In this document: positions 35,101 through 64,000 of the stretch, one piece after another
Layout of the letters: each line of letters begins with the position of its first letter
How positions within the stretch are numbered: the first letter of the stretch is position 1
Assembly (NCBI GenBank): GCA_950097015.1
Contig: CATNEN010000002.1
Coordinates: 310,001-374,000 of the forward strand
Origin: Macrostomum hystrix
Taxonomy: Eukaryota; Animalia; Platyhelminthes
Direction: 5' to 3'
DNA length: 64,000 bases
The notes under the pieces: generated by a model
The model's database searches: none
Seen by the model: the letters and a program-made list of their open reading frames with translations, nothing else
What the model was told of the DNA's origin: nothing
Translations under genes and position numbers: made by a program

Positions 35101-38100
35101 AGTTGTTAGACATTGGAATCAGTTGTTAGACATTGGAATCAGTTGTTAGACATTAGAATCAGTTGTTAGACATTGGATTCAGTTGTTAGACATTAGAATC
35201 AGTTGTTAGACATTGGATTCAGTTGTTAGACATTGGAATCAGTTGTTAGACATTGGATTCAGTTGTTAGACATTGGAATCAGTTGTTAGACATTGGAATC
35301 AGTTGTTAGACATTGGAATCAGTTGTTAGACATTGGAATCAGTTGTTAGACATTGGATTCAGTTGTTAGACATTGGATTCAGTTGTTAGACATTGGAATC
35401 AGTTGTTAGACATTGGAATCAGTTGTTAGACATTGGAATCAGTTGTTAGACATTGGAATCAGTTGTTAGACATTGGATTCAGTTGTTAGACACTAGAATC
35501 ACATGTTAGACACTGCATGGAATCACCTGTTTGACACTAGAATCAGTTGTTCGACATTGGATTCAGTTGTTAGACATTGGAATCACCTGTTTGACACTAG
35601 AATCAGTTGTTCGACATTGGATTCAGTTGTTAGACATTGGATTCAGTTGTTAGACATTGGATTCAGTTGTTAGACATTGGATTCAGTTGTTAGACATTGG
35701 ATTCAGTTGTTAGACATTGGATTCAGTTGTTCGACATTGGATTCAGTTGTTAGACATTGGATTCAGTTGTTAGACATTGGAATCAGTTGTTAGACATTGG
35801 AATCAGTTGTTAGACATTGGAATCAGTTGTTAGACATTGGAATCAGTTGTTAGACATTGGATTCAGTTGTTAGACATTAGAATCAGTTGTTAGACATTGG
35901 ATTCAGTTGTTAGACATTGGAATCAGTTGTTAGACATTGGATTCAGTTGTTAGACATTGGAATCAGTTGTTAGACATTGGAATCAGTTGTTAGACATTGG
36001 AATCAGTTGTTAGACATTGGAATCAGTTGTTAGACATTGGGTTCAGTTGTTAGACATTGGATTCAGTTGTTAGACATTGGAATCAGTTGTTAGACATTGG
36101 AATCAGTTGTTAGACATTGGAATCAGTTGTTAGACATTGGAATCAGTTGTTAGACATTGGATTCAGTTGTTAGACACTAGAATCACATGTTAGACACTGC
36201 ATGGAATCACCTGTTTGACACTAGAATCAGTTGTTCGACATTGGATTCAGTTGTTAGACATTGGATTCAGTTGTTAGACATTGGAATCAGTTGTTAGACA
36301 TTGGAATCAGTTGTTAGACATTGGAATCAGTTGTTAGACATTAGAATCAGTTGTTAGACATTGGATTCAGTTGTTAGACATTAGAATCAGTTGTTAGACA
36401 TTGGATTCAGTTGTTAGACATTGGAATCAGTTGTTAGACATTGGATTCAGTTGTTAGACATTGGAATCAGTTGTTAGACATTGGAATCAGTTGTTAGACA
36501 TTGGAATCAGTTGTTAGACATTGGAATCAGTTGTTAGACATTGGATTCAGTTGTTAGACATTGGATTCAGTTGTTAGACATTGGAATCAGTTGTTAGACA
36601 TTGGAATCAGTTGTTAGACATTGGAATCAGTTGTTAGACATTGGAATCAGTTGTTAGACATTGGATTCAGTTGTTAGACACTAGAATCACATGTTAGACA
36701 TTGGATTCAGTTGTTAGACATTGGAATCAGTTGTTAGACATTGGAATCAGTTGTTAGACATTGGAATCAGTTGTTAGACATTAGAATCAGTTGTTAGACA
36801 TTGGATTCAGTTGTTAGACATTAGAATCAGTTGTTAGACATTGGATTCAGTTGTTAGACATTGGAATCAGTTGTTAGACATTGGATTCAGTTGTTAGACT
36901 TTGGAATCAGTTGTTAGACATTGGAATCAGTTGTTAGACATTGGAATCAGTTGTTAGACATTGGAATCAGTTGTTAGACATTGGATTCAGTTGTTAGACA
37001 TTGGATTCAGTTGTTAGACATTGGAATCAGTTGTTAGACATTGGAATCAGTTGTTAGACATTGGAATCAGTTGTTAGACATTGGAATCAGTTGTTAGACA
37101 TTGGATTCAGTTGTTAGACATTGGAATCAGTTGTTAGACATTGGAATCAGTTGTTAGACATTGGAATCAGTTGTTAGACATTAGAATCAGTTGTTAGACA
37201 TTGGATTCAGTTGTTAGACATTGGAATCAGTTGTTAGACATTGGATTCAGTTGTTAGACATTGGAATCAGTTGTTAGACATTGGAATCAGTTGTTAGACA
37301 TTGGAATCAGTTGTTAGACATTGGAATCAGTTGTTAGACATTGGATTCAGTTGTTAGACATTGGATTCAGTTGTTAGACATTGGAATCAGTTGTTAGACA
37401 TTGGAATCAGTTGTTAGACATTGGAATCAGTTGTTAGACATTGGAATCAGTTGTTAGACATTGGATTCAGTTGTTAGACACTAGAATCACATGTTAGACA
37501 TTGGATTCAGTTGTTAGACATTGGAATCAGTTGTTAGACATTGGATTCAGTTGTTAGACATTGGAATCAGTTGTTAGACATTAGAATCAGTTGTTAGACA
37601 TTGGATTCAGTTGTTAGACATTAGAATCAGTTGTTAGACATTGGATTCAGTTGTTAGACATTGGAATCAGTTGTTAGACATTGGATTCAGTTGTTAGACA
37701 TTGGAATCAGTTGTTAGACATTGGAATCAGTTGTTAGACATTGGAATCAGTTGTTAGACATTGGAATCAGTTGTTAGACATTGGATTCAGTTGTTAGACA
37801 TTGGATTCAGTTGTTAGACATTGGAATCAGTTGTTAGACATTGGAATCAGTTGTTAGACATTGGAATCAGTTGTTAGACATTGGAATCAGTTGTTAGACA
37901 TTGGATTCAGTTGTTAGACACTAGAATCACATGTTAGACACTGCATGGAATCACCTGTTTGACACTAGAATCAGTTGTTCGACATTGGATTCAGTTGTTA
38001 GACATTGGAATCAGTTGTTAGACATTGGAATCAGTTGTTAGACATTGGAATCAGTTGTTAGACATTGGAATCAGTTGTTAGACATTAGAATCAGTTGTTA

Positions 38101-41100
38101 GACATTGGATTCAGTTGTTAGACATTAGAATCAGTTGTTAGACATTGGATTCAGTTGTTAGACATTAGAATCAGTTGTTAGACATTGGATTCAGTTGTTA
38201 GACATTGGAATCAGTTGTTAGACATTGGAATCAGTTGTTAGACATTGGAATCAGTTGTTAGACATTGGATTCAGTTGTTAGACATTGGATTCAGTTGTTA
38301 GACATTGGAATCAGTTGTTAGACATTGGAATCAGTTGTTAGACATTGGAATCAGTTGTTAGACATTGGAATCAGTTGTTAGACATTGGATTCAGTTGTTA
38401 GACACTAGAATCACATGTTAGACACTGCATGGAATCACCTGTTTGACACTAGAATCAGTTGTTCGACATTGGATTCAGTTGTTAGACATTGGATTCAGTT
38501 GTTAGACATTGGAATCAGTTGTTAGACATTGGAATCAGTTGTTAGACATTGGAATCAGTTGTTAGACATTAGAATCAGTTGTTAGACATTGGATTCAGTT
38601 GTTAGACATTAGAATCAGTTGTTAGACATTGGATTCAGTTGTTAGACATTGGAATCAGTTGTTAGACATTGGAATCAGTTGTTAGACATTGGAATCAGTT
38701 GTTAGACATTGGATTCAGTTGTTAGACATTGGATTCAGTTGTTAGACATTGGATTCAGTTGTTAGACATTGGAATCAGTTGTTAGACATTGGAATCAGTT
38801 GTTAGACATTGGAATCAGTTGTTAGACATTGGAATCAGTTGTTAGACATTGGATTCAGTTGTTAGACATTGGATTCAGTTGTTAGACATTGGAATCAGTT
38901 GTTAGACATTGGAATCAGTTGTTAGACATTAGAATCAGTTGTTAGACATTGGATTCAGTTGTTAGACATTGGAATCAGTTGTTAGACATTGGAATCAGTT
39001 GTTAGACATTGGAATCAGTTGTTAGACATTGGAATCAGTTGTTAGACATTGGATTCAGTTGTTAGACATTGGATTCAGTTGTTAGACATTGGATTCAGTT
39101 GTTAGACATTGGATTCAGTTGTTAGACATTGGATTCAGTTGTTAGACATTGGAATCAGTTGTTAGACATTGGAATCAGTTGTTAGACATTGGATTCAGTT
39201 GTTAGACATTGGATTCAGTTGTTAGACATTGGAATCAGTTGTTAGACATTGGATTCAGTTGTTAGACATTAGAATCAGTTGTTAGACATTGGATTCAGTT
39301 GTTAGACATTGGAATCAGTTGTTAGACATTGGAATCAGTTGTTAGACATTGGAATCAGTTGTTAGACATTAGAATCAGTTGTTAGACATTGGATTCAGTT
39401 GTTAGACATTGGATTCAGTTGTTAGACATTGGAATCAGTTGTTAGACATTGGATTCAGTTGTTAGACACTAGAATCACATGTTAGACACTGCATGGAATC
39501 ACCTGTTTGACACTAGAATCAGTTGTTCGACATTGGATTCAGTTGTTAGACATTGGATTCAGTTGTTAGACATTGGAATCAGTTGTTAGACATTGGATTC
39601 AGTTGTTAGACATTAGAATCAGTTGTTAGACATTGGATTCAGTTGTTAGACATTGGAATCAGTTGTTAGACATTGGAATCAGTTGTTAGACATTGGAATC
39701 AGTTGTTAGACATTGGAATCAGTTGTTAGACATTGGATTCAGTTGTTAGACATTGGATTCAGTTGTTAGACATTGGAATCAGTTGTTAGACATTGGAATC
39801 AGTTGTTAGACATTGGAATCAGTTGTTAGACATTGGAATCAGTTGTTAGACGCGAGAATCAGTTGTTAGACGCGAGAATCAGTTGTTAGACATTGGAATC
39901 AGTTGTTAGACATTGGAATAAGTTGTTAGACACGGGAATCAGTTGTTAGACACTGGAATCACCTGTTTGACACTAGAATCAGTTGTTAGACATTGGAATC
40001 AGTTGTTAGACATTGGAATCAGTTGTTAGACATTGGATTCAGTTGTTAGACATTGGATTCAGTTGTTAGACATTGGATTCAGTTGTTAGACATTGGAATC
40101 AGTTGTTAGACGCGAGAATCAGTTGTTAGACATTGGAATCAGTTGTTAGACATTGGAATCAGTTGTTAGACATTGGAATCAGTTGTTAGACATTGGAATC
40201 AGTTGTTAGACATTGGAATCAGTTGTTAGACATTGGAATCAGTTGTTAGACATTGGAATCAGTTGTTAGACATTGGATTCAGTTGTTAGACATTGGAATC
40301 AGTTGTTAGACATTGGATTCAGTTGTTAGACATTGGATTCAGTTGTTAGACATTGGAATCAGTTGTTAGACATTGGAATCAGTTGTTAGACATTGGAATC
40401 AGTTGTTAGACACGGGAATCAGTTGTTACACATTGGAATCAGTTGTTAGACATTGGAATCAGTTGTTAGACATTGGATTCAGTTGTTAGACATTGGATTC
40501 AGTTGTTAGACATTGGAATCAGTTGTTAGACATTGGATTCAGTTGTTAGACACTAGAATCACATGTTAGACACTGCATGGAATCACCTGTTTGACACTAG
40601 AATCAGTTGTTCGACATTGGATTCAGTTGTTAGACATTGGAATCAGTTGTTAGACATTGGAATCAGTTGTTAGACGCGAGAATCAGTTGTTAGACGCGAG
40701 AATCAGTTGTTAGACATTGGAATCAGTTGTTAGACATTGGAATAAGTTGTTAGACACGGGAATCAGTTGTTAGACACTGGAATCACCTGTTTGACACTAG
40801 AATCAGTTGTTAGACATTGGATTCAGTTGTTAGACATTGGATTCAGTTGTTAGACATTGGAATCAGTTGTTAGACATTGGATTCAGTTGTTAGACATTAG
40901 AATCAGTTGTTAGACATTGGAATCAGTTGTTAGACATTAGAATCAGTTGTTAGACATTGGATTCAGTTGTTAGACATTGGAATCAGTTGTTAGACATTGG
41001 AATCAGTTGTTAGACATTGGAATCAGTTGTTAGACATTGGAATCAGTTGTTAGACATTGGATTCAGTTGTTAGACATTGGATTCAGTTGTTAGACATTGG

Positions 41101-42136
41101 AATCAGTTGTTAGACATTGGAATCAGTTGTTAGACATTGGAATCAGTTGTTAGACATTGGAATCAGTTGTTAGACGCGAGAATCAGTTGTTAGACGCGAG
41201 AATCAGTTGTTAGACATTGGAATCAGTTGTTAGACATTGGAATAAGTTGTTAGACACGGGAATCAGTTGTTAGACACTGGAATCACCTGTTTGACACTAG
41301 AATCAGTTGTTAGACATTGGAATCAGTTGTTAGACATTGGAATCAGTTGTTAGACATTGGATTCAGTTGTTAGACATTGGATTCAGTTGTTAGACATTGG
41401 ATTCAGTTGTTAGACATTGGAATCAGTTGTTAGACGCGAGAATCAGTTGTTAGACATTGGAATCAGTTGTTAGACATTGGAATCAGTTGTTAGACATTGG
41501 AATCAGTTGTTAGACATTGGAATCAGTTGTTAGACATTGGAATCAGTTGTTAGACATTGGAATCAGTTGTTAGACATTGGAATCAGTTGTTAGACATTGG
41601 ATTCAGTTGTTAGACATTGGAATCAGTTGTTAGACATTGGATTCAGTTGTTAGACATTGGATTCAGTTGTTAGACATTGGAATCAGTTGTTAGACATTGG
41701 AATCAGTTGTTAGACATTGGAATCAGTTGTTAGACACGGGAATCAGTTGTTAGACATTGGAATCAGTTGTTAGACATTGGAATCAGTTGTTAGACATTGG
41801 AATCAGTTGTTAGACACTGGAATCAGTTGTTAGACATTGGAATAAGTTGTTAGACACGGGAATCAGTTGTTAGACATTGGAATCAGTTGTTAGACACGGG
41901 AATCAGTTGTTAGACACGGGAATCAGTTGTTAGACACGGGAATCAGTTGTTAGACACGGGAATCAGTTTTTAGACATTGGAATCAGTTGTTAGACATTGG
42001 AATCAGTTGTTAGACATTGGATTCAGTTGTTAGACATTGGATTCAGTTGTTAGACATTGGAATCAGTTGTTAGACACGGGAATCAGTTGTTAGACACGGG
42101 AATCAGTTGTTAGACGCGGGAATCATTTTTTAGACA
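23194..42136. repeat. About 19-kb satellite of 20-bp monomers (about 945 units) with higher-order structure
   Basis: Consensus TGTTAGACATTGGA(A/T)TCAGT. Variants include CACTAGAATCACA, a 24-bp CACTGCATGGAATC unit, and CGCGAG and CACGGG toward the right end. Confidence 0.99.
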
Positions 42137-45429: not shown

Positions 45430-48400
45430 CTCTATCTCAGCCCGTTCCATCCTCTCACCCTATCCCATCCTCTCAGCCCATTCCATCCTCTCATCCCATT
45501 CCATCCTCTCACCCCATTCCATCCTCTCACCCTATCCCATCCTCTCACCCCATTCCATCCTCTCACCCCATTCCATCCTCTCACCCCATTCCATCCTCTC
45601 ACCCCATTCCATCCTCTCACCCCATTCCATCCTCTCGCCCTATCCCATCCTCTCACCCCATTCCATCCTCTCACCCCATTCCATCCTCTCACCCCATTCC
45701 ATCCTCTCACCCCATTCCATCCTCTCACCCTATCCCATCCTCTCACCCCATTCCATCCTCTCACCCCATTCCATCCTCTCAGCCCATTCCATCCTCTCAC
45801 CCTATCCCATCCTCTCGCCCTATCCCATCCTCTCACCCCATTCCATCCTCTCACCCCATTCCATCCTCTCACCCCATTCCATCCTCTCACCCCATTCCAT
45901 CCTCTCACCCTATCCCATCCTCTCACCTATTCCATCCTCTCACCCCATTCCATCCTCTCAGCCCATTCCATCCTCTCACCCTATCCCATCCTCTCACCCT
46001 ATCCCATCCTCTCACCCCATTCCATCCTCTCACCCCATTCCATCCTCTCATCCCATTCCATCCTCTCACCCTATCCCATCCTCTCACCCCATTCCATCCT
46101 CTCACCCCATTCCATCCTCTCACCCCATTCCATCCTCTCACCCCATTCCATCCTCTCATCCCATTCCATCCTCTCACCCCATTCCATCCTCTCACCCCAT
46201 TCCATCCTCTCACCCCATTCCATCCTCTCACCCCATTCCATCCTCTCACCCCATTCCATCCTCTCACCCCATTCCATCCTCTGACCCCATTCCATCCTCT
46301 CACCCCATTCCATCCTCTCACCCCATTCCATCATCTCATCCCATTCCATCCTCTCACCCCATTCCATCCTCTCACCCCATTCCATCCTCTCACCCCATTC
46401 CATCCTCTCACCCTATCCCATCCTCTTACCCTATCCCATCCTCTCACCCAATCCCATCCTCTCATCCCATTCCATCCTCTCACCCCATTCCATCCTCTCA
46501 CCCCATTCCATCCTCTCACCCCATTCCATCCTCTCACCCCATTCCATCCTCTCACCCCATTCCATCCTCTCACCCCATTCCATCCTCTCACCCCATTCCA
46601 TCCTCTCACCCTATCCCATCCTCTCATCCCATTCCATCCTCTCACCCCATTCCATCCTCTGACCCCATTCCATCCTCTCACCCCATTCCATCCTCTCACC
46701 CCATTCCATCATCTCATCCCATTCCATCCTCTCACCCCATTCCATCCTCTGACCCCATTCCATCCTCTCACCCCATTCCATCCTCTCACCCTATCCCATC
46801 CTCTCACCCTATCCCATCCTCTCACCCAATCCCATCCTCTCATCCCATTCCATCCTCTCACCCCATTCCATCCTCTCACCCCATTCCATCCTCTCACCCC
46901 ATTCCATCCTCTCATCCCATTCCATCCTCTCACCCCATTCCATCCTCTCACCCCATTCCATCCTCTCACCCCATTCCATCCTCTCACCCCATTCCATCCT
47001 CTCACCCCATTCCATCCTCTCACCCTATCCCATCCTCTCACCCCATTCCATCCTCTCACCCTATCCCATCCTCTCATCCCATTCCATCCTCTCACCCCAT
47101 TCCATCCTCTCACCCCATTCCATCCTCTCACCCCATTCCATCCTCTCATCCCATTCCATCCTCTCACCCCATTCCATCCTCTCACCCCAATCCATCCTCT
47201 CAGCCCATTCCATCCTCTCACCCCATTCCATCCTCTCATCCCATTCCATCCTCTCACCCTATCCCATCCTCTCATCCCATTCCATCCTCTCATCCCATTC
47301 CATCCTCTCACCCTATCCCATCCTCTCATCCCATTCCATCCTCTCACCCCATTCCATCCTCTCAGCCCATTCCATCCTCTCATCCCATTCCATCCTCTCA
47401 CCCCATTCCATCCTCTCACCCCATTCCATCCTCTCAGCCCATTCCATCCTCTCACCCCATTCCATCCTCTCACCCTATCCCATCCTCTCACCCCATTCCA
47501 TCCTCTCACCCCATTCCATCCTCTCACCCCATTCCATCCTCTCACCCCATTCCATCCTCTCATCCCATTCCATCCTCTCACCCCATTCCATCCTCTCACC
47601 CCATTCCATCCTCTCACCCCATTCCATCCTCTCATCCCATTCCATCCTCTCACCCCATTCCATCCTCTCACCCCATTCCATCCTCTCACCCCATTCCATC
47701 CTCTCACCCCATTCCATCCTCTCACCCCATTCCATCCTCTCACCCCATTCCATCCTCTCACCCCATTCCATCCTCTCACCCCATTCCATCCTCTCACCCC
47801 ATTCCATCCTCTCACCCCATTCCATCCTCTCACCCCATTCCATCCTCTCACCCTATCCCATCCTCTCACCCTATCCCATCCTCTCACCCCATTCCATCCT
47901 CTCACCCCATTCCATCCTCTCACCCTATCCCATCCTCTCATCCCATTCCATCCTCTCAGCCCATTCCATCCTCTCATCCCATTCCATCCTCTCATCCCAT
48001 TCCATCCTCTCACCCCATTCCATCCTCTCACCCCATTCCATCCTCTCACCCCATTCCATCCTCTCACCCCATTCCATCATCTCATCCCATTCCATCCTCT
48101 CACCCCATTCCATCCTCTCACCCCATTCCATCCTCTCACCCCATTCCATCCTCTCACCCTATCCCATCCTCTCATCCCATTCCATCCTCTCAGCCCATTC
48201 CATCCTCTCATCCCATTCCATCCTCTCATCCCATTCCATCCTCTCATCCCATTCCATCCTCTCATCCCATTCCATCCTCTCACCCCATTCCATCCTCTCA
48301 CCCTATCCCATCCTCTTATCCCATTCCATCCTCTCATCCCATTCCATCCTCTCACCCTATCCCATCCTCTCATCCCATTCCATCCTCTCACCCCATTCCA

Positions 48401-49028
48401 TCCTCTCAGCCCATTCCATCCTCTCACCCCATTCCATCCTCTCAGCCCATTCCATCCTCTCATCCCATTCCATCCTCTCAGCCCATTCCATCCTCTCATC
48501 CCATTCCATCCTCTCATCCCATTCCATCCTCTCACCCCATTCCATCCTCTCATCCCATTCCATCCTCTCACCCCATTCCATCCTCTCACCCCATTCCATC
48601 CTCTCACCCCATTCCATCCTCTCACCCCATTCCATCCTCTCACCCCATTCCATCCTCTCACCCCATTCCATCCTCTCACCCCATTCCATCCTCTCACCCC
48701 ATTCCATCCTCTCACCCCATTCCATCCTCTCATCCCATTCCATCCTCTCACCCCATTCCATCCTCTCACTCCATTCCATCCTCTCACCCCATTCCATCCT
48801 CTCACCCCATTCCATCCTCTCAGCCCATTCCATCCTCTCATCCCATTCCATCCTCTCAGCCCATTCCATCCTCTCATCACATTCCATCCTCTCATCCCAT
48901 TCCATCCTCTCAGCCCATTCCATCCTCTCATCCCATTCCATCCTCTCACCCCATTCCATCCTCTCAGCCCATTCCATCCTCTCATCCCATTCCATCCTCT
49001 CATCCCATTCCATCCTCTCACCCCATTC
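45430..49028. repeat. 18-bp C-rich minisatellite (about 200 units)
   Basis: Unit CCCATTCCATCCTCTCAC, with CCTATCCC, AGCCC and ATCCC variants. Confidence 0.98.
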
Positions 49029-51073: not shown

Positions 51074-51424
51074 CTATAGCATGGTCTCGTAGCATCGGTG
51101 TTCAACTCCGGCTGCAGTCTCCAGGACTCGATCCTGCCATGAATCCAGCCTCATCAACAACGCTGGCGACACCGCGGTTGCGATCTGAGGAGCTCCAGCT
51201 GTCACGGCTCCATTCAGCAGTCGCTCTTCGGGATCTTCTTCTTCAGCTGCAGCGGCCTTCAACGAGTCAACGCGCTCGCCCTTCTCGCAGTCGGTCTCGA
51301 TGTCCTCGGAGACGAAGCGCTGCCGAAGAGCACTCTTGGAAGCGCAAGCCAGACAGACAGCAGCCAGGCAGAGAGCGAGCAGCAGCAGACAGAAGGCGGC
51401 GAACGAGACCGAGACTGCCGACAT
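51074..51424 (-). CDS. Small protein (116 aa) with an N-terminal hydrophobic anchor or signal, an acidic region and C-terminal CYETML
   Basis: GC-rich coding-like ORF MSAVSVSFAAFCLLLLALCLAAVCLACASKSALRQR... A phase-1 acceptor (ccccgcag, exon start 51432) precedes it. An in-frame TGA at 51445-51443 limits read-in from upstream. Confidence 0.6.
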   Translation of the reverse strand: MSAVSVSFAAFCLLLLALCLAAVCLACASKSALRQRFVSEDIETDCEKGERVDSLKAAAAEEEDPEERLLNGAVTAGAPQIATAVSPALLMRLDSWQDRVLETAAGVEHRCYETML

Positions 51425-51454
51425 GGCCGACGCTGCGGGGTTTCACGAGCGGCG

Positions 51455-51806
51455 GGATCTGAATTGGATGGGATCTGGATGGGATGGGATCTGGATGGGA
51501 TGGGATCTGGATAGGCTGGGATCTGAATGGGATGGGATCTGGATGGGATGGGATCTGGATGGGATGGGATGGGATCTGGGTGGAATAGGATCTGGATGGG
51601 ATGGGATCTGGGTGGAATAGGATCTGGATGGGATGGGATCTGGGTGGAATAGGATCTGGATGAGATGGGATCTAGATGAAATGGGATCTGGATGAAATGG
51701 GATCTGGATGGGATGGGATGGGATCTGGATGAAATGAGATCTGGATGGGATGGGATCTGGATGAAATGGGATCTGGATGGGATGGGATCTGGATAGGATG
51801 GGATCC
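51455..51806. repeat. G-rich degenerate minisatellite (GGGATGGGATCTGGAT-type)
   Basis: Visible tandem units of about 16-21 bp. Confidence 0.9.
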
Positions 51807-52571
51807 AGTCAGGTATTTGAATTTGTGAGTGAGGAGAATCATTAAATGAAATCTTATGACACAAAAACTTAATGTTTTTCTATCCATATCGGCTTACCGG
51901 TATTGGAGGCAACAATCGCTGGGTCGAGGCTCTGATGCTGAGCAATCTTAGATGCCACAATTGCGCTGACCTGTTGAAACTGCTGGCCGGTGAAATTTCC
52001 TGCAATCTGAACTGTCATTATGCAGTAACTCAGGTTGGGATCTGAGGTTGTCTGGCCTGGAGACTAAAACTGTCCACCCCCTACTGGGAATAGCTCTCAT
52101 TTATAGTCTGAGCTGAGCATGGGCATGGTGTGGGAAGAAATCCCTTTGTTTGGGCGTGGCCGCTATGGCAACATGTATTTTTAGCAACACGCTCTGGCCA
52201 CATATTCCATGATGCACAAGTTCCCTCCCACATCATATATGTTAAGCTTCATGTTAGGCCATCCTAAGCTGGGGAGTTTGCTGAGTGACTCACTCGGGAG
52301 ATCCCCATTTGGCGGCCAATTGGGAGTTTCAGTTTGCAGCCGGCTTGATGGCCACACCTTGCAATAAATCTCCAAGAGCTGTGTCTATCAAGGTCGTAGA
52401 GAGTTACCGAAGATGGTAACTTTTAACCGTGTTCTGGAATTGAATTTATCTAAATATTGCTGAGTTTTAGTTACATTTTTAAACAATTAAATTTTACAGT
52501 ATTTACATTTTCCTTTTGTATAAGTCATTTAGAAGTTTAGAGCATTGAGAAAATTTCGCATTTTTATCTAA

Positions 52572-53280: not shown

Positions 53281-54173
53281 TCTTCCAGTATTAAGGATTC
53301 GATCTGTAAATACGGTCTCTTACTGCAAAGTCTCAAGTTATTTCATACAAATAAACGAAATCGAAGTCATTCTGTGTTCCAACCGCGGTAAGCGCTGCAT
53401 TCGTGTCTTTACTTTCGGAGTGCGTGCCTGTACGGAGTACTGTATCTTACTTATAAGTACTGTTCACTAATCTCAGAAAGTTCACTCATTTCAGAAACTT
53501 CACTTATCTTCGAAAGTATACTTATTTTTGAAAGTTCAGTCATTTAGCTCATTTCTGAAAGTTCATAAAGTTACTAAATTTCAGAAATTTCAGAATTGCT
53601 ACTACGTACTGAAAATTCAGTAAGGTTCCTGAAATCTCTTCGATTTCCCATGTTTCAGGCCGTAAGAAAATTTCAGTTGGTTGTCAAATTTGTGCTATGC
53701 ACTTTCTGCTATTGCAACCGGCATGCATTTTCTATCTTAGATGCAAGCCAGATTTCCGTTCAAACTAGCGCCAAATTATTTCCGCGGTGTAACAAATTTC
53801 AGCTATGGAATTTGCGAGTCAGTTCAGGTGCAGCTGAGTCTACTATAACTAATATGCTAGCAATTATACTTATTTAGGATAATATGATCATGAACAGAAA
53901 TTTAGTATTATCTCGCCCCAACGAGTTTAATTAACTGCTTGAGTGAAAAACAGAACCAACCTTCAGCTTTTATAGTTTTGTATTTTAGTCCCTGTTACGA
54001 GGATGCTGATCAAATTTTTCATGTCTTGCGATCGTTTTTTCATGTCTTGACGCGAAAATGTTCATCAATAATTTATTTTCTTCTTTGGCAAAAATATTTT
54101 ATGCCAAATCGGCACTCCTGTTAGCCAATGATAGAACAGTAAAATTTGTTAAACATTGACTTCCAACCGTTTC

Positions 54174-57100
54174 TTAGAATAACAGTAAACGATCATCACG
54201 CTTATTGGCTGAAAACTGATCAATAGGCATTCGATTTTTCCTTTTTCCGCGCAACGGTTCGAAGACGTTTGTTAGAGGTCTGGGATCTGGATAGACCAGC
54301 TCCTCGGAGCTCCAGGATAACCGATTGCCAAACTCGCTTAACTCTGCGGATTGCCGGGTTGGTGTTGCCTGTCTGTCTAACAGCTTATACAACTGGTCTA
54401 ACATGTAGTCTAACATGTAGTCTAACATGTAGTCTAACATGTGGTCTAACATGTAGTCTAACATGTAGTCTAACATGTACTCTAACATGTGGTCTAACAT
54501 GTGGTCTAACATGTGGTCTAACTGTAGTCTAACATGTAGTCTAACATGTGGTCTAACATGTAGTCTAACATGTAGTCTAACATGTACTCTAACATGTGGT
54601 CTAACATGTGGTCTAACATGTAGTCTAACATGTAGTCGAACATGTAGTCTAACATGTGGTCTAACATGTAGTCTAACATGTAGTCTAACATGTGGTCTAA
54701 CATGTGGTCTAACATGTAGTCTAACATGTAGTCTAACATGTAGTCTAACATGTGGTCTAACATGTAGTCTAACATGTAGTCTAACATGTAGTCTAACATG
54801 TAGTCTAACATGTAGTCTAACATGTAGTCTAGCATGTAGTCTAACATGTAGTCTAACATGTAGTCTAACAAGTCGTCTAACATGTAGTCTAACATGTAGT
54901 CTAACATGTAGTCTAACATGTAGTCTAACATGTAGTCTAACATGTAGTCTAACATGTAGTCTAACATGTAGTCTAACATGTAGTCTAACATGTAGTCTAA
55001 CATGTAGTCTAACGTGTTGTTCTACAAGGGAACAAATTTAGCATACCTTATCCTTCAAAACTCACCATTATTTCGGAGAGGATCCACTCGCTTTAGGAAG
55101 TTCTCAGTCTTGTCAGATGTCACAGCGTTTGAATTTACAACGGCCCGTAATGGCATCGATTCACCAGCTGAAAACAAGAATTATATTACGAGTATTTAAA
55201 GTTTATCAAAGCACTTTAATAAAATAAAAAGTGAGGTTCGCCCCAGCTGTAGTGTCTAGACTAAATCTTTTTACCGATTGATTGACAAGCAAATCAGCAC
55301 AAAATTTTCTGTTTCATTGGATTAAAAATGTTTCGCATAGATACTTCGAAAGCTAGAAAAACTAAACGATTTTGTAAATCATACAGTTCAAGTGTTTTAA
55401 GTCTCGTCCGTTTTTAATTTTACTCAATTCAAAATTGCAGTTTTGTAAGTCATTTAGATTCATTCATTTAGTCATTTTGACCCGCGACACACAAGTGTTT
55501 GTCAGTCACTCGGCAATTGTTAAGTTCCCATTTTTTCTCTCTCTTTTTCAAAAGAAATTTCCAGGAAAACTTTCACCTGTTCAAACAGATGTTCGCATCT
55601 CATTCAAGCAGTTAAACGATGTCTGCAATGTTCCTGACGAATTCAACAGTTCAAATTTACAAGAGAGCCTTTTCATATGCATGCAATCTATGCTTGAATG
55701 AGGTTGGGCAGTTTTATAAAACCGTTTGCGAAACTCAAAATCTCTATACCAATTCATGACAGATATTAACTGGGTTGCGTTGCCCTGCACGAACTTGACA
55801 GACAAAATGACACAATGAGAGACATAAAGAGTGACAGAATGAGTGACACGGAGAGTGTGAGAATGGGTGACACAGAGAGTGTGAGAATGAGTGACACAGA
55901 GTGTGACAGAATGAGTGACACAGAGAGAGTGACAGAATGAGTGACACAGAGTGTGACAGAATGAGTGACACAGAGAGTGACAGAATGAGTGACACAGAGT
56001 GTGACAGAATGAGTGACACAGAGAGAGTGACAGAACGAGTGACACAGAGGTGTGAGAATGAGTGACACAGAGTGTGACAGAATGAGTGACACAGAGAGTG
56101 ACAGAATGAGTGACACAGAGAGTGACAGAATGAGTGACACAGAGTGTGACAGAATGAGTGACACAGAGAGAGTGACAGAATGAGTGACACAGAGTGTGAC
56201 AGAATGAGTGACACAGAGAGTGACAGAATGAGTGACACAGAGTGTGACAGAATGAGTGACACAGAGAGAGTGACAGAACGAGTGACACAGAGGTGTGAGA
56301 ATGAGTGACACAGAGAGTGACAGAATGAGTGACACAGAGAGTGACAGAATGAGTGACACAGAGAGTGACAGAATGAGTGACACAGAGAGAGTGACAGAAT
56401 GAGTGACACAGAGAGTGACAGAATGAGTGACACAGAGAGTGACAGAATGAGTGACACAGAGTGTGACAGAATGAGTGACACAGAGTGTGACAGAATGAGT
56501 GACACAGAGTGTGACAGAATGAGTGACACAGAGAGTGACAGAATGAGTGACATAGAGAGTGACAGAATGAGTGACACAGAGAGTGACAGAATGAGTGACA
56601 CAGAGAGTGACAGAATGAGTGACACAGAGAGTGACAGAATGAGTGACACAGAGAGTGACAGAATGAGTGACACAGAGAGTGACAGAATGAGTGACACAGA
56701 GAGTGACAGAATGAGTGACACAGAGAGTGTGAGAATGAGTGACACAGAGAGTGACAGAATGAGTGACACAGAGAGTGACAGAATGAGTGACACAGAGAGT
56801 GACAGAATGAGTGACACAGAGAGAGTGACAGAATGAGTGACACAGAGAGTGACAGAATGAGTGACACAGAGAGTGACAGAATGAGTGACACAGAGTGTGA
56901 CAGAATGAGTGACACAGAGTGTGACAGAATGAGTGACACAGAGTGTGACAGAATGAGTGACACAGAGAGTGACAGAATGAGTGACATAGAGAGTGACAGA
57001 ATGAGTGACACAGAGAGTGACAGAATGAGTGACACAGAGAGTGACAGAATGAGTGACACAGAGAGTGACAGAATGAGTGACACAGAGAGTGACAGAATGA

Positions 57101-57720
57101 GTGACACAGAGAGTGACAGAATGAGTGACACAGAGAGTGACAGAATGAGTGACACAGAGAGTGACAGAATGAGTGACATAGAGAGTGACAGAATGAGTGA
57201 CACAGAGAGTGACAGAATGAGTGACATAGAGAGTGACAGAATGAGTGACACAGAGAGTGACAGAATGAGTGACACAGAGAGTGACAGAATGAGTGAAACA
57301 GAGAGTGACAGAATGAGTGACACAGAGAGTGACAGAATGAGTGACACAGAGAGTGACAGAATGAGTGACACAGAGAGTGACAGAATGAGTGACACAGAGG
57401 TGTGAGAATGAGTGACACAGAGAGTGACAGAATGAGTGACACAGAGAGTGACAGAATGAGTGACACAGAGAGTGACAGAATGAGTGACACAGAGAGTGAC
57501 AGAATGAGTGACACAGAGAGTGACAGAATGAGTGACACAGAGAGTGACAGAAAAAGAGACGAAGTGGCCGAGAAGGGGTCTCTGAGAGAGGAGCAAAGAA
57601 TAAAAGAAATATTTTACCGTCTCCATCGTCCCCTGGCAGGACTACAAAGGCCTCGGCGTTTTGACAGACCAGCAGCAGAACTATCAGAGACAATAAAAAA
57701 ATGGCGAAAGCTCTAATCAT
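54174..57720 (-). CDS. Putative secreted prohormone/neuropeptide precursor, 3 exons: 57720-57618, 55167-55066, about 54376-54174 (135 aa)
   Basis: Exon 1 encodes a signal peptide ([24 protein letters not shown]) and ends at donor G|gtaaaa. Exon 2 is phase 1-1 (ttcttgttttcag / G|gtgagt) and open. The exon 3 frame contains FEPLR-G-KR and a further KR. AATAAA lies on the minus strand at 54077-54072. The exon 3 acceptor is ambiguous. Confidence 0.6.
54395..55013. repeat. 12-bp minisatellite in intron 2 of the putative prohormone gene
   Basis: Unit GTCTAACATGT(A/G), about 50 copies. Confidence 0.97.
55820..57550. repeat. 24-bp (2x12) minisatellite in intron 1 of the putative prohormone gene
   Basis: Unit GAGTGACACAGAGAGTGACAGAAT, with occasional +2 GA slips. 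Confidence 0.97.
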
Positions 57721-57795: not shown

Positions 57796-57885
57796 CTTTA
57801 TAGTCAAAGATTCACTGCTTGTCTTGGATTTGCTAATGCAGCCAGCCAATTATCGGTGGAAGGGTCCCGATGGAGTCCTACGTCA
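57796..57885 (-). promoter_or_regulatory. Candidate promoter of the signal-peptide gene: CRE-like site, CCAAT, TATA
   Basis: TATAAAG on the minus strand at 57802-57796 (about 76 nt before the ATG); CCAAT at 57846-57850; TGACGTAG on the minus strand at 57885-57878. Confidence 0.45.
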
Positions 57886-58643: not shown

Positions 58644-61600
58644 ATTCTTGTAGTGATTCTGGCTTCGCATTTTTAACTAGAAATATTTAATAATTCGCGA
58701 ATAGTATTAAAGACTTTTTTGTTAATTAACGGACTTACTAACACTTAACACTTAACATTATGAACTCGAACTTAGGTACCATGTCCGATATGTCCGAGCT
58801 GTAATTATAAATTGCAAATCGACGAGTTAACACCTGCATGACTACCTGTTCAGATATTCATATCATAACTCTTCTGTGCCTGTTCTTGAATCGCTTATCA
58901 AACAGGAATATTAGTCCGCGTTCTGTATTGGCACTCATTATATGATTGTTATAATCGAAGCGCAGCAGGAATCGCAGCAGGAATCGTAGCCAGTATCGCA
59001 GAAAGAATGAATATATTTAGGAATCGAAGTTCAAACTGCCGCAGGAATCGTAGCTAGAATCGCAGCAGGAAACCTAGCTAGAATCGCAGCAAGAATCGTA
59101 TTTAGAATCGCAGCAGGAATCCTAGCTAGAATCGCAGCAAGAATCGTATTTAGAATCGTAGCAGGAATCCTAGCTAGAATCGCAGCAGGAATCGTAGCTA
59201 GAATCGCAGCAGGAATCGTAGCTAGAATCGCAGCAGGAATCCTAGATAGAATTGCAGCAGGAATTCTTGATATAATAGCGAAGTAATGCTTTGAATAGAA
59301 TCAAAGCAGGAATCGTAGCTAAAATCGCAGCAGGAATCGTAGCTAGAATCGCAGCAGGAATCCTAGCTAGAATCGCAGCAGGAATCGTAGCTAGAATCGC
59401 AGCAGGAATCCTAGCTAGAATCGCAGCAGGAATCCTAGCTAGAATCGCAGCAGGAATCGTAGCTAGAATCAAAGCAGGAATCGTAGCTAAAATCGCAGCA
59501 GGAATCGTAGCTAGAATCACAGCAGGAATCGTAGCTAGAATCACAGCAGGAATCGTAGCTAGAATCACAGCAGGAATCGTAGCTAGAATCACAGCAGGAA
59601 TCGTAGCTAGAATCGCAGCAGGAATCCTAGCTAGAATCGCAGCAGGAATCCTAGCTAGAATCGCAGCAGGAATCGTAGCTAGAATCGCAGCAGGAATCCT
59701 AGCTAGAATCGCAGCAGGAATCCTAGCTAGAATCACAGCAGGAATCGTAGCTAGAATCACAGCAGGAATCGTAGCTAGAATCACAGCAGGAATCGTAGCT
59801 AGAATCACAGCAGGAATCGTAGCTAGAATCGCAGCAGGAATCCTAGCTAGAATCGCAGCAGGAATCCTAGCTAGAATCGCAGCAGGAATCGTAGCTAGAA
59901 TCGCAGCAGGAATCCTAGCTAGAATCGCAGCAGGAATCCTAGCTAGAATCGCAGCAGGAATCGTAGCTAGAATCGCAGCAGGAATCCTAGCTAGAATCGC
60001 AGCAGGAATCCTTGCTAGAATCGCAGCAGGAATCGTAGCTAGAATCGCAGCAGGTATCGTAGCTAGAATCGCAGCAGGAATCGTAGCTAGAATCGCAGCA
60101 GGAATCGTAGCTAGAATCGCAGCAGGAATCCTAGATAGAATTGCAGCAGGAATTCTTGATATAATAGCGAAGTAATGCTTTGAATAGAATCAAAGCAGGA
60201 ATCGTAGCTAAAATCGCAGCAGGAATCGTAGCTAGAATCACAGCAGGAATCGTAGCTAAAATCGCAGCAGGAATCGTAGCTAGAATCACAGCAGGAATCG
60301 TAGCTAGAATCACAGCAGGAATCGTAGCTAGAATCACAGCAGGAATCGTAGCTAGAATCACAGCAGGAATCGTAGCTAGAATCACAGCAGGAATCGTAGC
60401 TAGAATCACAGCAGGAATCGTAGCTAGAATCACAGCAGGAATCGTAGCTAGAATCACAGCAGGAATCGTAGCTAGAATCGCAGCAGGAATCCTAGATAGA
60501 ATCACAGCAGGAATCGTAGCTAGAATCGCAGCAGGAATCCTAGATAGAATCGCAGCAGGAATCCTAGATAGAATCGCAGCAGGAATCGTAGCTAGAATCG
60601 CAGCAGGAATCCTAGCTAGAATCGCAGCAGGAATCCTAGATAGAATCACAGCAGGAATCGTAGCTAGAATCGCAGCAGGAATCGTAGATAGAATCGCAGC
60701 AGGAATCCTAGATAGAATCGCAGCAGGAATCCTAGCTAGAATTGCAGCAGGAATCCTAGATAGAATTGCAGCAGGAATTCTTGATAGAATGGCGAAGTAA
60801 TGCCTTGAATAGAATCAAAGCAGGAATCGTAGCTAGAATCGCAGCAGGAATCGTAGCTAGAATCACAGCAGGAATCGTAGCTAGAATCGCAGCAGGAATC
60901 CTAGATAGAATCGCAGCAGGAATCCTAGCTAGAATCACAGCAGGAATCGTAGCTAGAATCGCAGCAGGAATCGTAGCTAGAATCGCAGCAGGAATCGTAG
61001 CTAGAATCGCAGCAGGAATCCTAGATAGAATTGCAGCAGGAATCCTAGATAGAATTGCAGCAGGAATCCTAGATAGAATTGCAGCAGGAATCCTAGATAG
61101 AATTGCAGCAGGAATTCTAGATAGAATGGCGAAGTAAAGCCTTGAATAGAATCAAAGCAGGAATCGTAGCTAGAATCGCAGCAGGAATCGTAGCTAGAAT
61201 CGCAGCAGGAATCGTAGCTAGAATCGCAGCAGGAAACCTAGATAGAATTGCAGCAGGAATCGTAGCTAGAATCGCAGCAGGAAACCTAGAAAGAATTGCA
61301 GCAGGAATCGTAGATAGAATCGCAGCAGGAAACCTAGATAGAATCGCAGCAGGAATCCTAGATAGAATTGCAGCAGGAATCCTAGATAGAATTGCAGCAG
61401 GAATTCTAGATAGAATGGCGAAGTAAAGCCTTGAATAGAATCAAAGCAGGAATCGTAGCTAGAATCGCAGCAGGAATCGTAGCTAGAATCGCAGCAGGAA
61501 TCGTAGCTAGAATCGCAGCAGGAAACCTAGATAGAATTGCAGCAGGAATCCTAGATAGAATTGCAGCAGGAATTCTAGATAGAATGGCGAAGTAAAGCCT

Positions 61601-64000
61601 TGAATAGAATCGCAGCAGGAATCGTAGCTAGAATCGCAGCAGGAATCGTAGCTAGAATCGCAGCAGGAATCCTAGATAGAATTGCAGCAGGAATCCTAGA
61701 TAGAATTGCAGCAGGAATTCTAGATAGAATGGCGAAGTAAAGCCTTGAATAGAATCAAAGCAGGAATCGTAGCTAGAATCGCAGCAGGAATCGTAGCTAG
61801 AATCGCAGCAGGAATCGTAGCTAGAATCGCAGCAGGAATCGTAGCTAGAATCGCAGCAGGAAACCTAGATAGAATCGCAGCAGGAAACCTAGATAGAATC
61901 GCAGCAGGAATCGTAGCTAGAATCGCAGCAGGAAACCTAGATAGAATCGCAGCAGGAAACCTAGATAGAATCGCAGCAGGAATCCTAGATAGAATTGCAG
62001 CAGGAATTCTAGATAGAATGGCGAAGTAAAGCCTTGAATAGAATCAAAGCAGGAATAAAAACTACAGGTTGTAGACTCGGATTGTGAAAATGGGTGCTCA
62101 AATTCGTCTATGGCCGCTCTTTGCTGCCAGCGAGGATTCACGTGAGAGGAAAGCAGATTTATGGGCTTTATGGGCTATATAAGCTAAGCAGGTTAATATA
62201 GTAATATAATTCTTGTAGTGATTCTGGCTTCGCATTTTTAACTAGAAATATTTAATAATTCGCGAATAGTATTAAAGACTTTTTTGTTAATTAACGGACT
62301 TACTAACACTTAACACTTAACATTATGAACTCGAACTTAGGTACCATGTCCGATATGTCCGAGCTGTAATTATAAATTGCAAATCGACGAGTTAACACCT
62401 GCATGACTACCTGTTCAGATATTCATATCATAACTCTTCTGTGCCTGTTCTTGAATCGCTTATCAAACAGGAATATTAGTCCGCGTTCTGTATTGGCACT
62501 CATTATATGATTGTTATAATCGAAGCGCAGCAGGAATCGCAGCAGGAATCGTAGCCAGTATCACAGAAAGAATGAATATATTTAGGAATCGAAGTTCAAA
62601 CTGCCGCAGGAATCGTAGCTAGAATCGCAGCAGGAAACCTAGCTAGAATCGCAGCAAGAACCGTATTTAGAATCGCAGCAGGAATCCTAGCTAGAATCGC
62701 AGCAAGAATCGTATTTAGAATCGTAGCAGGAATCCTAGCTAGAATCGCAGCAGGAATCGTAGCTAGAATCGCAGCAGGAATCGTAGCTAGAATCGCAGCA
62801 GGAATCCTAGATAGAATTGCAGCAGGAATTCTTGATATAATAGCGAAGTAATGCTTTGAATAGAATCAAAGCAGGAATCGTAGCTAAAATCGCAGCAGGA
62901 ATCGTAGCTAGAATCACAGCAGGAATCGTAGCTAGAATCACAGCAGGAATCGTAGCTAGAATCACAGCAGGAATCGTAGCTAGAATCGCAGCAGGAATCC
63001 TAGCTAGAATCGCAGCAGGAATCCTAGCTAGAATCGCAGCAGGAATCGTAGCTAGAATCAAAGCAGGAATCGAAGCTAAAATCGCAGCAGGAATCGTAGC
63101 TAGAATCACAGCAGGAATCGTAGCTAGAATCACAGCAGGAATCGTAGCTAGAATCACAGCAGGAATCGTAGCTAGAATCACAGCAGGAATCGTAGCTAGA
63201 ATCGCAGCAGGAATCCTAGCTAGAATCGCAGCAGGAATCCTAGCTAGAATCGCAGCAGGAATCGTAGCTAGAATCGCAGCAGGAATCCTAGCTAGAATCG
63301 CAGCAGGAATCCTAGCTAGAATCGCAGCAGGAATCGTAGCTAGAATCGCAGCAGGAATCCTAGCTAGAATCGCAGCAGGAATCCTTGCTAGAATCGCAGC
63401 AGGAATCGTAGCTAGAATCGCAGCAGGAATCGTAGCTAGAATCGCAGCAGGAATCCTAGCTAGAATCGCAGCAGGAATCGTAGCTAGAATCGCAGCAGGA
63501 ATCCTAGCTAGAATCGCAGCAGGAATCCTAGCTAGAATCGCAGCAGGAATCGTAGCTAGAATCGCAGCAGGAATCCTAGATAGAATCGCAGCAGGAATCG
63601 TAGCTAGAATCACAGCAGGAATCGTAGCTAGAATCACAGCAGGAATCGTAGCTAGAATCACAGCAGGAATCGTAGCTAGAATCACAGCAGGAATCGTAGC
63701 TAGAATCGCAGCAGGAATCCTAGCTAGAATCGCAGCAGGAATCCTAGCTAGAATCGCAGCAGGAATCGTAGCTAGAATCGCAGCAGGAATCCTAGCTAGA
63801 ATCGCAGCAGGAATCCTAGCTAGAATCGCAGCAGGAATCGTAGCTAGAATCGCAGCAGGAATCCTAGCTAGAATCGCAGCAGGAATCCTTGCTAGAATCG
63901 CAGCAGGAATCGTAGCTAGAATCGCAGCAGGAATCGTAGCTAGAATCGCAGCAGGAATCCTAGCTAGAATCGCAGCAGGAATCGTAGCTAGAATCGCAGC
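58644..64000. repeat. Composite 3,565-bp tandem unit (about 330-bp unique spacer plus a 24-bp minisatellite), about 1.5 copies, truncated by the window end
   Basis: ATTCTTGTAGTGATTCTGG at 58644 and 62209; AAGTAATGCTTTGAATAG at 59281 and 62846. Minisatellite AGCTAGAATCGCAGCAGGAATCGT, punctuated by GCGAAGTAA..TTGAATAGAATCAAAG linkers. Confidence 0.95.

What the first reader, a model, noticed from the sequence alone, without database searches (positions are those of the whole stretch)
54174..57720. Candidate novel neuropeptide/prohormone precursor hidden between minisatellite-filled introns
Seen: three small minus-strand exons splice in phase to [135 protein letters not shown]. The xPLR motif occurs three times (SMPLR, VDPLR, FEPLR). 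A TATA/CCAAT/CRE-like promoter lies upstream and AATAAA lies about 100 nt after the stop. Established: a signal peptide, dibasic convertase sites and G-KR amidation signals are hallmarks of peptide precursors. Inference: the product is an amidated ..FEPLRamide that I cannot assign to a named family. Caveats: a downstream acceptor (AG ending 54369) gives a different frame with an RRVKR furin-like site, and exon 2 could instead splice in phase to the membrane exon at 51432. The ORF track hides the gene inside repeat ORFs.
Basis: partly seen in the sequence, partly recalled or inferred. Interest (0 to 1): 0.75.

Follow-up and report, generated by a model that had tools for sequence, protein, structure and literature searches.

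The report
Flatworm PLR-amide neuropeptide precursor gene
This is a real small gene of a Macrostomum-type flatworm for a secreted precursor that should be cut and amidated into one long signalling peptide ending in Pro-Leu-Arg-amide. It belongs to a three-gene family that is in databases only as "hypothetical protein" and has no name.

Summary
Exon 1 and exon 3 both match, in order, one Macrostomum lignano protein recorded only as hypothetical. It was the only hit among 1.84 billion representatives (E 3e-4; pairwise 3e-14).

The same genome holds two paralogues, on contigs C25 and C39, and M. lignano holds a second gene. In all eight sequences the residues F-G, W and F-x-P-L-R-G-K-R are invariant, while spacer and tail are not conserved. 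That is the usual pattern of a neuropeptide precursor, so the predicted ...F-E-P-L-R-amide end is supported.

All genome copies share the three-exon, phase-1/phase-1 layout. The middle exon always carries a Lys-Arg near its 3' end. In M. lignano it is present in some records and absent in others, so exon 2 is probably a cassette exon. It would switch the peptide between about 50 and about 53 residues.

The three "xPLR" motifs are not a conserved feature. The 51432 exon belongs to a neighbouring gene.

No named family fits: NKY, tachykinin/natalisin and NPF all fail their defining features.

The scan met this family before on other DNA of this genome (s1-405138). I found no transcript data for this species.

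The parts
57879..57885 (-). CRE-like half site TGACGTA upstream of the gene
   Evidence: Read directly. Function not tested.
57846..57850 (-). Inverted CCAAT box (ATTGG)
   Evidence: ATTGG boxes also lie upstream of the C39 and C25 paralogues.
57796..57802 (-). TATA box (TATAAAG), about 80 nt before the ATG
57618..57720 (-). Exon 1: ATG, signal peptide (57720-57649, cleavage predicted after A-E-A) and 10 further residues. It is 103 nt and ends in phase 1.
   Evidence: It matches the M. lignano orthologue around the cleavage site (E 1e-4). Exon 1 of the C39 paralogue is also 103 nt and phase 1.
55808..57552 (.). 24-bp minisatellite (about 72 copies) filling intron 1
55066..55167 (-). Exon 2: probable cassette exon of 102 nt, phase 1 to phase 1, with a Lys-Arg cleavage site at 55093-55088, seven codons before its end
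   Evidence: Five phase-compatible open AG..GT candidates lie in the non-repeat part of the intron; this one has the best splice signals. Counterparts with a KR near the 3' end exist in both paralogues and both M. lignano genes. There is no sequence similarity to them.
54396..55017 (.). 12-bp minisatellite (about 52 copies) filling intron 2. Each unit has an acceptor-like ttag|AC that is in frame with exon 3.
54174..54376 (-). Exon 3: coding part with stop. It holds the conserved peptide core, the GKR amidation/cleavage signal and a non-conserved tail with a second KR.
   Evidence: HMMER hit to M. lignano PAA82416.1. Exon 3 starts with AC after a phase-1 junction (Asp codon) in all three genome copies.
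54240..54332 (-). Conserved core, from F-G to [11 protein letters not shown] lies at 54248-54240.
   Evidence: The invariant columns of alignment A2 are F15, G16, W21, F38, P40, L41, R42, G43, K44, R45.
54072..54077 (-). AATAAA polyadenylation signal, about 100 nt after the stop

Best explanation
This is a small three-exon gene for a secreted prohormone of a Macrostomum-restricted 'PLR-amide' family.

Proposed steps, all inferred from the sequence signals and from established prohormone processing:
1. The signal peptide is removed after A-E-A.
2. A prohormone convertase cuts after Lys-Arg.
3. A carboxypeptidase trims the basic residues.
4. Peptidylglycine amidating monooxygenase turns the exposed Gly into an amide.

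The product is one long peptide that contains the conserved F-G-x-x-[LI]-x-W-...acidic...-[YF] core and ends in V-F-E-P-L-R-NH2.

The middle exon is probably a cassette exon. When it is included, its KR site sets the N-terminus and the peptide is about 50 residues. When it is skipped, the peptide starts at the signal-peptide cut and is about 53 residues. The amidated C-terminus most likely addresses a G-protein-coupled receptor.

Shown here: the exons, frames, signals, orthologue, paralogues and conservation pattern. Inferred: splicing in this species, processing, amidation, and neuronal or endocrine use.
For: - Exons and signals were read directly.
- Exon 3 as query had one hit in 1.84e9 representatives: M. 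lignano PAA82416.1, E 3e-4. The pairwise comparison gave 56% identity and E 3e-14 and covers L-V-Y-P...V-F-E-P-L-R-G-K-R.
- Exon 1 matches the same protein at the signal-peptide cleavage site.
- There are two paralogues in the same genome. They were found with the M. lignano protein and with a back-translated F-K-P-L-R-G-K-R pattern, which gave 2 hits against 0 in the reversed-pattern control. A profile search found exactly three loci.
- A second M. lignano gene exists, Mlig008231.
- In alignment A2 only F, G, W and F-x-P-L-R-G-K-R are invariant; the spacer and tail are free to vary.
- The C39 paralogue has the same exon layout, including a 103-nt exon 1. The C25 paralogue has the same phases.
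- Both forms, with and without the cassette, are on record in M. lignano. The NCBI models include PAA82416.1 without it and PAA81780.1 with it.
- The genome has copper monooxygenase (PHM-type) domains.
Against:
- SignalP and NeuroPred were not available, so the signal peptide is judged by rule only.
- Exon 2 has no sequence similarity to the cassettes of relatives.
- The exact exon 3 acceptor is ambiguous, because every unit of the 12-bp repeat offers an in-frame ttag|AC.
- The tissue of expression is unknown.
- PF01082 also covers dopamine beta-hydroxylase-type enzymes, so one search does not prove that an amidating enzyme is present.
Confidence: 0.8

Rival explanations
1. The gene is the same, but the main mRNA has two exons, with exon 1 spliced directly to exon 3. 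Exon 2 would then be a minor cassette or not an exon at all. The product would start right after the signal peptide.
For: Both junctions are phase 1, so skipping keeps the frame. The NCBI models of the M. lignano orthologue PAA82416.1 and PAA89275.1 lack any middle exon. Their segment from the signal-peptide cut to the junction has the same length, 10 residues plus Asp, as in the window gene. Exon 2 matches nothing elsewhere.
Against: Exon 2 has a strong polypyrimidine-CAG acceptor and a GTGAGT donor, and it is the best of only five phase-compatible candidates. A middle exon with a KR near its 3' end is present at both paralogous loci and in M. lignano records PAA81780.1 and PAA50402.1.
Confidence: 0.4
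2. The family is a macrostomid offshoot of the lophotrochozoan NKY-1 peptide that has lost the terminal Tyr.
For: This rests on comparison by eye with NKY-1 precursors printed in the supplement of PMC8557429. Nemertean NKY-1 has L-S-S-F-G-S-Q-I followed 12 residues later by K-P-F-R-Y-G. The family here has L-S-S-Q-F-G-G, or Q-F-G-S-Q-I, followed 15-22 residues later by F-K-P-L-R-G. Both are long, single-copy, amidated peptides.
Against: The published defining features are not met (PMC6425005). There is no N-terminal Lys, no C-terminal Tyr-amide and no F-W-[RQ]-P-[LM]-G centre. There is also no long N-terminal propeptide. The invariant Trp of this family has no NKY-1 counterpart. The same by-eye method also finds P-L-P-V in M. 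lignano, but in the wrong order relative to F-G-S, which shows how cheap such matches are. No statistical alignment was run.
Confidence: 0.2
3. It is a secreted peptide of a non-neuronal gland, for example a prostate, seminal-fluid or adhesive secretion, rather than a neuropeptide or hormone.
For: The family appears restricted to one genus and its spacers evolve fast. The tissue is unknown.
Against: An invariant Gly-Lys-Arg directly after a conserved C-terminal motif, together with a conserved dibasic site upstream, is the signature of regulated-pathway processing and amidation.
Confidence: 0.1
4. There is no gene. The open pieces next to the repeats would be a chance arrangement.
For: Repeat arrays create many long ORFs in this window.
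Against: There is collinear homology of exons 1 and 3 to an M. lignano protein, two paralogues with the same exon phases, and invariant processing signals.
Confidence: 0.02

Closest known systems
Macrostomum lignano hypothetical proteins PAA82416.1, PAA89275.1 and PAA81780.1 (BOX15_Mlig033437 and Mlig020276) and UniProt A0A1I8GCJ1
   Same: This is the orthologue. It has the same signal-peptide cut (A-[DE]-A|F), the same core and F-[EK]-P-L-R-G-K-R, and the same position for an optional KR-bearing middle segment.
   Different: Identity is only about 50-56% in the core. The spacer and tail are unrelated. It carries no functional annotation; one source labels it 'Transmembrane protein'.
Paralogues in the same genome (G000:C39 near 18.80 Mb, G000:C25 near 6.55 Mb) and M. 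lignano Mlig008231 (PAA50402.1)
   Same: Same three-exon, phase-1/phase-1 layout, the same invariant residues, and a KR-bearing middle exon.
   Different: They end in F-K-P-L-R rather than F-E-P-L-R. The aromatic residue after the acidic run is Phe in C39 and in M. lignano Mlig008231, but Tyr in C25 as in the window gene. Identity to the window exon 3 is 34-43%.
Lophotrochozoan neuropeptide KY (NKY-1)
   Same: It is a long, single-copy amidated peptide with an F-G-S block in the middle and a K-P-x-R block near the end (by eye).
   Different: NKY-1 has Lys at the N-terminus, RY-amide at the end, an F-W-x-P-x-G centre and a long propeptide before the peptide. None of these is present here.
Protostome tachykinin-related peptides (F-x-G-x-R-amide) and arthropod natalisin (F-x-P-x-R-amide); motifs from my own knowledge
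   Same: The last five residues, F-[EK]-P-L-R-amide, fit F-x-x-x-R-amide and the natalisin form F-x-P-x-R-amide.
   Different: Those are short peptides in multi-copy precursors. Here there is one copy of a peptide of about 50 residues, with a second conserved block far upstream. No homology was detected.

Membership tests
Amidated neuropeptide / prohormone precursor (generic kind) | N-terminal signal peptide | tested here: met
   The start has Arg3, a 15-residue hydrophobic core and small residues at -1 and -3 (A-E-A|F). The cleavage motif is conserved in M. lignano. This was judged by rule; SignalP was not available.
Amidated neuropeptide / prohormone precursor (generic kind) | Gly followed by a dibasic site directly after the conserved peptide end | tested here: met
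   G-K-R is invariant in 8 of 8 sequences.
Amidated neuropeptide / prohormone precursor (generic kind) | Conservation confined to the peptide, with spacers and tail free to vary | tested here: met
   Alignments A1 and A2.
Amidated neuropeptide / prohormone precursor (generic kind) | Transcript in neurons or endocrine cells, and mature amidated peptide detected | not testable with these tools
NKY (neuropeptide KY) | Lys at the N-terminus of the mature peptide | tested here: not met
   The definition is in PMC6425005. Here the residue after KR is V, S, F or Y, and the residue after the signal peptide is F or L.
NKY (neuropeptide KY) | C-terminal Tyr-amide (R-Y-G-basic) | tested here: not met
   All members end in P-L-R-G-K-R.
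NKY (neuropeptide KY) | Central F-W-[RQ]-P-[LM]-G-[YG] (NKY-1) or G-[YF]-W-I-W-M-P-A-Q-G (NKY-2) | tested here: not met
   Both motifs are absent from all eight sequences.
NKY (neuropeptide KY) | Detectable sequence homology to NKY precursors | not tested
   NKY sequences were available only as printed text in a supplement. Typing them into a tool was left out, so the comparison was by eye only.
Protostome tachykinin / natalisin | F-x-G-x-R-amide (tachykinin) or F-x-P-x-R-amide (natalisin) C-terminus | tested here: inconclusive
   F-[EK]-P-L-R-amide fails the Gly of tachykinin but fits the natalisin pattern. A five-residue fit is weak evidence.
Protostome tachykinin / natalisin | Several short peptide copies per precursor | tested here: not met
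   Every member has a single G-K-R-terminated copy.
NPF / NPY | R-x-R-[FY]-amide C-terminus | tested here: not met
   The peptide ends in P-L-R-amide. Pfam gave no hit.

The most novel reading that the evidence does not exclude
The PLR-amide family is an undescribed neuropeptide system of macrostomid flatworms, and one gene makes two ligands. A conserved cassette exon carries a Lys-Arg site, and its inclusion or skipping switches the peptide's N-terminus between a convertase cut and the signal-peptidase cut. The family may also descend from NKY-1 by loss of the terminal Tyr, which would shift it towards a tachykinin/natalisin-like ending.
Probability: 0.2. Interest if true: 0.6.

Novelty: new member of a known kind. 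Interest (0 to 1): 0.42.

Why it matters
Flatworm neuropeptide catalogues are incomplete. Macrostomum is a laboratory model for regeneration and reproduction.

A conserved, orphan, single-copy amidated peptide family offers three things:
- a clean ligand for receptor deorphanisation;
- a conserved splice-controlled processing site;
- a test case for how peptide families drift, given the possible NKY-1 link.

The finding also shows that short genes in this genome are hidden inside minisatellite ORFs, so they would be missed by ORF-based annotation.

Tried and rejected
**Searches that found nothing**
- Word-index protein search with the natural 112-aa ORF window:54177-54512:-, scoring residues 47-112: no candidate.
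- Pfam on all exons and on the M. lignano proteins: nothing.
- ESM Atlas on P0003: only sub-threshold look-alikes.
- Literature search for PLR-amide, PLRGKR, FKPLRG and FEPLRG: no neuropeptide paper.
- M. lignano gene and UniProt identifiers: in no held paper.
- Planarian prohormone supplement of PMC2953531: no PLRG, KPLR or EPLR.
- Spiralian proneuropeptide supplement of PMC8557429: no PLRG[KR] precursor.
- The search of earlier findings by sequence: blank.

- The polyclad NKY1 sequence is not in the held supplement.
- Koziol et al. 2016 (flatworm neuropeptide discovery) and Bauknecht & Jekely 2015 are not held. A prior listing of this family in those papers cannot be excluded.

- The joined spliced protein was never built or searched. 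All searches were made exon by exon, by reference.

**Readings rejected**
- Acceptor ending at 54369: it shifts out of the conserved frame.
- Exon 2 spliced to 51432: that exon belongs to a neighbour gene with its own promoter and first exon.
- A repeated xPLR motif as a functional feature.
Full report
**What is in the sequence**

The window is a repeat-rich eukaryotic contig, G000:C2:310001-374000, from a 220-Mb genome.

- Exon 1 (57720-57618) is 103 nt: ATG plus 34 codons plus one base, followed by gtaaaa.
- Exon 2 (55167-55066) is 102 nt. It follows ttcttgttttcag and is followed by gtgagt.
- Exon 3 (54376-54174) follows ttag and ends in TAA.

Every junction is phase 1. The three exons therefore join in frame, and so does exon 1 joined directly to exon 3.

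The start has the usual build of a signal peptide: Arg3, a 15-residue hydrophobic core, and A-E-A before the predicted cut. KR lies at 55093-55088 and GKR at 54248-54240. The TATA, ATTGG and TGACGTA motifs and an AATAAA about 100 nt after the stop are all present.

Exon 1 heads a 658-aa ORF that runs through the 24-bp minisatellite. Exon 3 is the tail of a 112-aa ORF that runs out of the 12-bp minisatellite.

**Is it more than chance?**

Yes. I searched exon by exon and by reference only.

- Exon 3 searched against 1.84 billion representative proteins gave a single hit: Macrostomum lignano PAA82416.1, 'hypothetical protein BOX15_Mlig033437g2', at E 3e-4.
- The pairwise comparison gave 56% identity and E 3e-14. 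It runs through L-V-Y-P ... V-F-E-P-L-R-G-K-R.
- Exon 1 matches the same protein around the signal-peptide cut, C-x-x-A-[DE]-A-F-x-V-x-P-x-D-x-G, at E 1e-4.

Two separate exons therefore match one foreign protein in the right order.

**A small gene family**

- The M. lignano protein, searched against the window's own genome, finds exon 3 and two further loci on contigs C25 and C39.
- A back-translated F-K-P-L-R-G-K-R pattern finds exactly those two loci, against none for the reversed-pattern control.
- A profile of all members finds three loci and no more.
- A profile search of the protein collection adds a second M. lignano gene, Mlig008231.

In the eight-sequence alignment the invariant columns are F-G, a Trp five residues later, and F-x-P-L-R-G-K-R. 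The pre-core spacer and the post-GKR tail are not conserved. That is the standard conservation pattern of a neuropeptide precursor.

The x position is Glu or Lys even between M. lignano gene copies.

**Gene structure and the middle exon**

The C39 paralogue has a TATA-like and CCAAT-type promoter. Its exon 1 is exactly 103 nt and ends in phase 1. Its middle exon is also phase 1 and ends ...R-K-R-F-S. Its last exon begins with AC.

The C25 paralogue has a 60-nt middle exon ending ...Y-K-R-Y-N-A-M, a last exon beginning with AC, and a candidate 109-nt exon 1 in phase 1.

In M. lignano, both genes are on record with and without an in-frame middle segment. The segment is 28 or 19 residues and carries a KR near its end. 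The NCBI models include both forms: PAA82416.1 without it and PAA81780.1 with it.

The window's exon 2 has no sequence similarity to these segments. It does sit in the same place, has the same phase, carries a KR seven codons from its end, and has the best splice signals of only five phase-compatible candidates in the non-repeat part of the intron.

I therefore read exon 2 as a cassette exon, and I cannot say which isoform dominates. The exact exon 3 acceptor is also open. Each unit of the 12-bp repeat has an in-frame ttag|AC. The conserved frame rules out the acceptor ending at 54369.

The exon at 51432 belongs to a separate gene with its own TATA box and ATG exon at 52017.

**How it most likely works (inferred)**

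1. The signal peptide is cut after A-E-A.
2. A convertase cuts after KR.
3. The basic residues are trimmed.
4. The exposed Gly is converted into a C-terminal amide.

With exon 2 the peptide is 50 residues: seven from exon 2, the junction Asp, and 42 from exon 3. Without exon 2 it is 53 residues, starting at the signal-peptide cut.

The genome encodes copper monooxygenase domains of the PHM type. That family also includes other enzymes, so this is weak support only.

The tail after GKR has a second KR but is not conserved, so I take it for spacer.

**Comparison with known families**

- Pfam and the ESM Atlas gave nothing.
- No paper in the held library mentions a PLR-amide neuropeptide or these M. 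lignano genes.
- The planarian and spiralian precursor supplements hold no PLRG[KR] precursor.

I checked that reading against the published definition and against printed NKY sequences. The N-terminal Lys, the C-terminal Tyr-amide, the F-W-x-P-x-G centre and the long propeptide are all absent.

What remains is a by-eye resemblance: L-S-S-F-G-S-Q-I and K-P-F-R-Y-G in nemertean NKY-1, against L-S-S-Q-F-G-G or Q-F-G-S-Q-I and F-K-P-L-R-G here. The same method also finds P-L-P-V in the wrong order, so I give the NKY link about 0.2.

The last five residues fit F-x-P-x-R-amide, the natalisin motif as I know it. Natalisins and tachykinins, however, are short multi-copy peptides. NPF/NPY is excluded by the C-terminus.

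**Limits**

- There is no transcript or peptide evidence for this species.
- SignalP and NeuroPred were not available.
- NKY sequences existed only as printed text and were not typed into tools.
- Koziol et al. 2016 is not held, so a prior listing of this family there cannot be excluded.

**Verdict**

This is a real gene and a new, unnamed member of the well-known kind 'amidated neuropeptide precursor'. It is part of a three-gene family seen only in Macrostomum, and the scan has already met the family once on other DNA of this genome. The conserved KR-bearing cassette exon is the one feature that goes beyond the ordinary.

Noticed in passing
window 51085-52105, minus strand: This is a separate two-exon gene with a TATA box near 52105. 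Exon 1 runs from the ATG at 52017 to 51896 (phase 1). The intron is filled with a 16-bp repeat. Exon 2 starts at 51432 and encodes a small single-pass membrane protein.
   Followed up: partly
window 23200-42136, also 45435-49028 and 59041-64000: There are very large minisatellite arrays: 19 kb of a 20-bp unit, 3.6 kb of an 18-bp unit, and at least 5 kb of a 24-bp unit that runs off the window end. Most of the window is tandem repeat.
   Followed up: no
window 54396-55017: Every unit of the 12-bp intron repeat carries an acceptor-like ttag|AC that is in frame with exon 3. A shift in acceptor choice would add four-residue units without breaking the frame.
   Followed up: partly
M. lignano proteins P0001, P0002, P0003, P0007-P0009: Gene copies of the orthologue differ by a charge reversal (Glu versus Lys) at the x of F-x-P-L-R-G. 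That position of the predicted active end is therefore free to vary.
   Followed up: partly
L010:5207-5315 (G000:C25): This is a candidate signal-peptide exon of the C25 paralogue: 109 nt, phase 1, donor gtgagg. Two ATTGG boxes and a TATA-like box lie upstream, and a 2-kb intron filled with a minisatellite lies downstream.
   Followed up: partly
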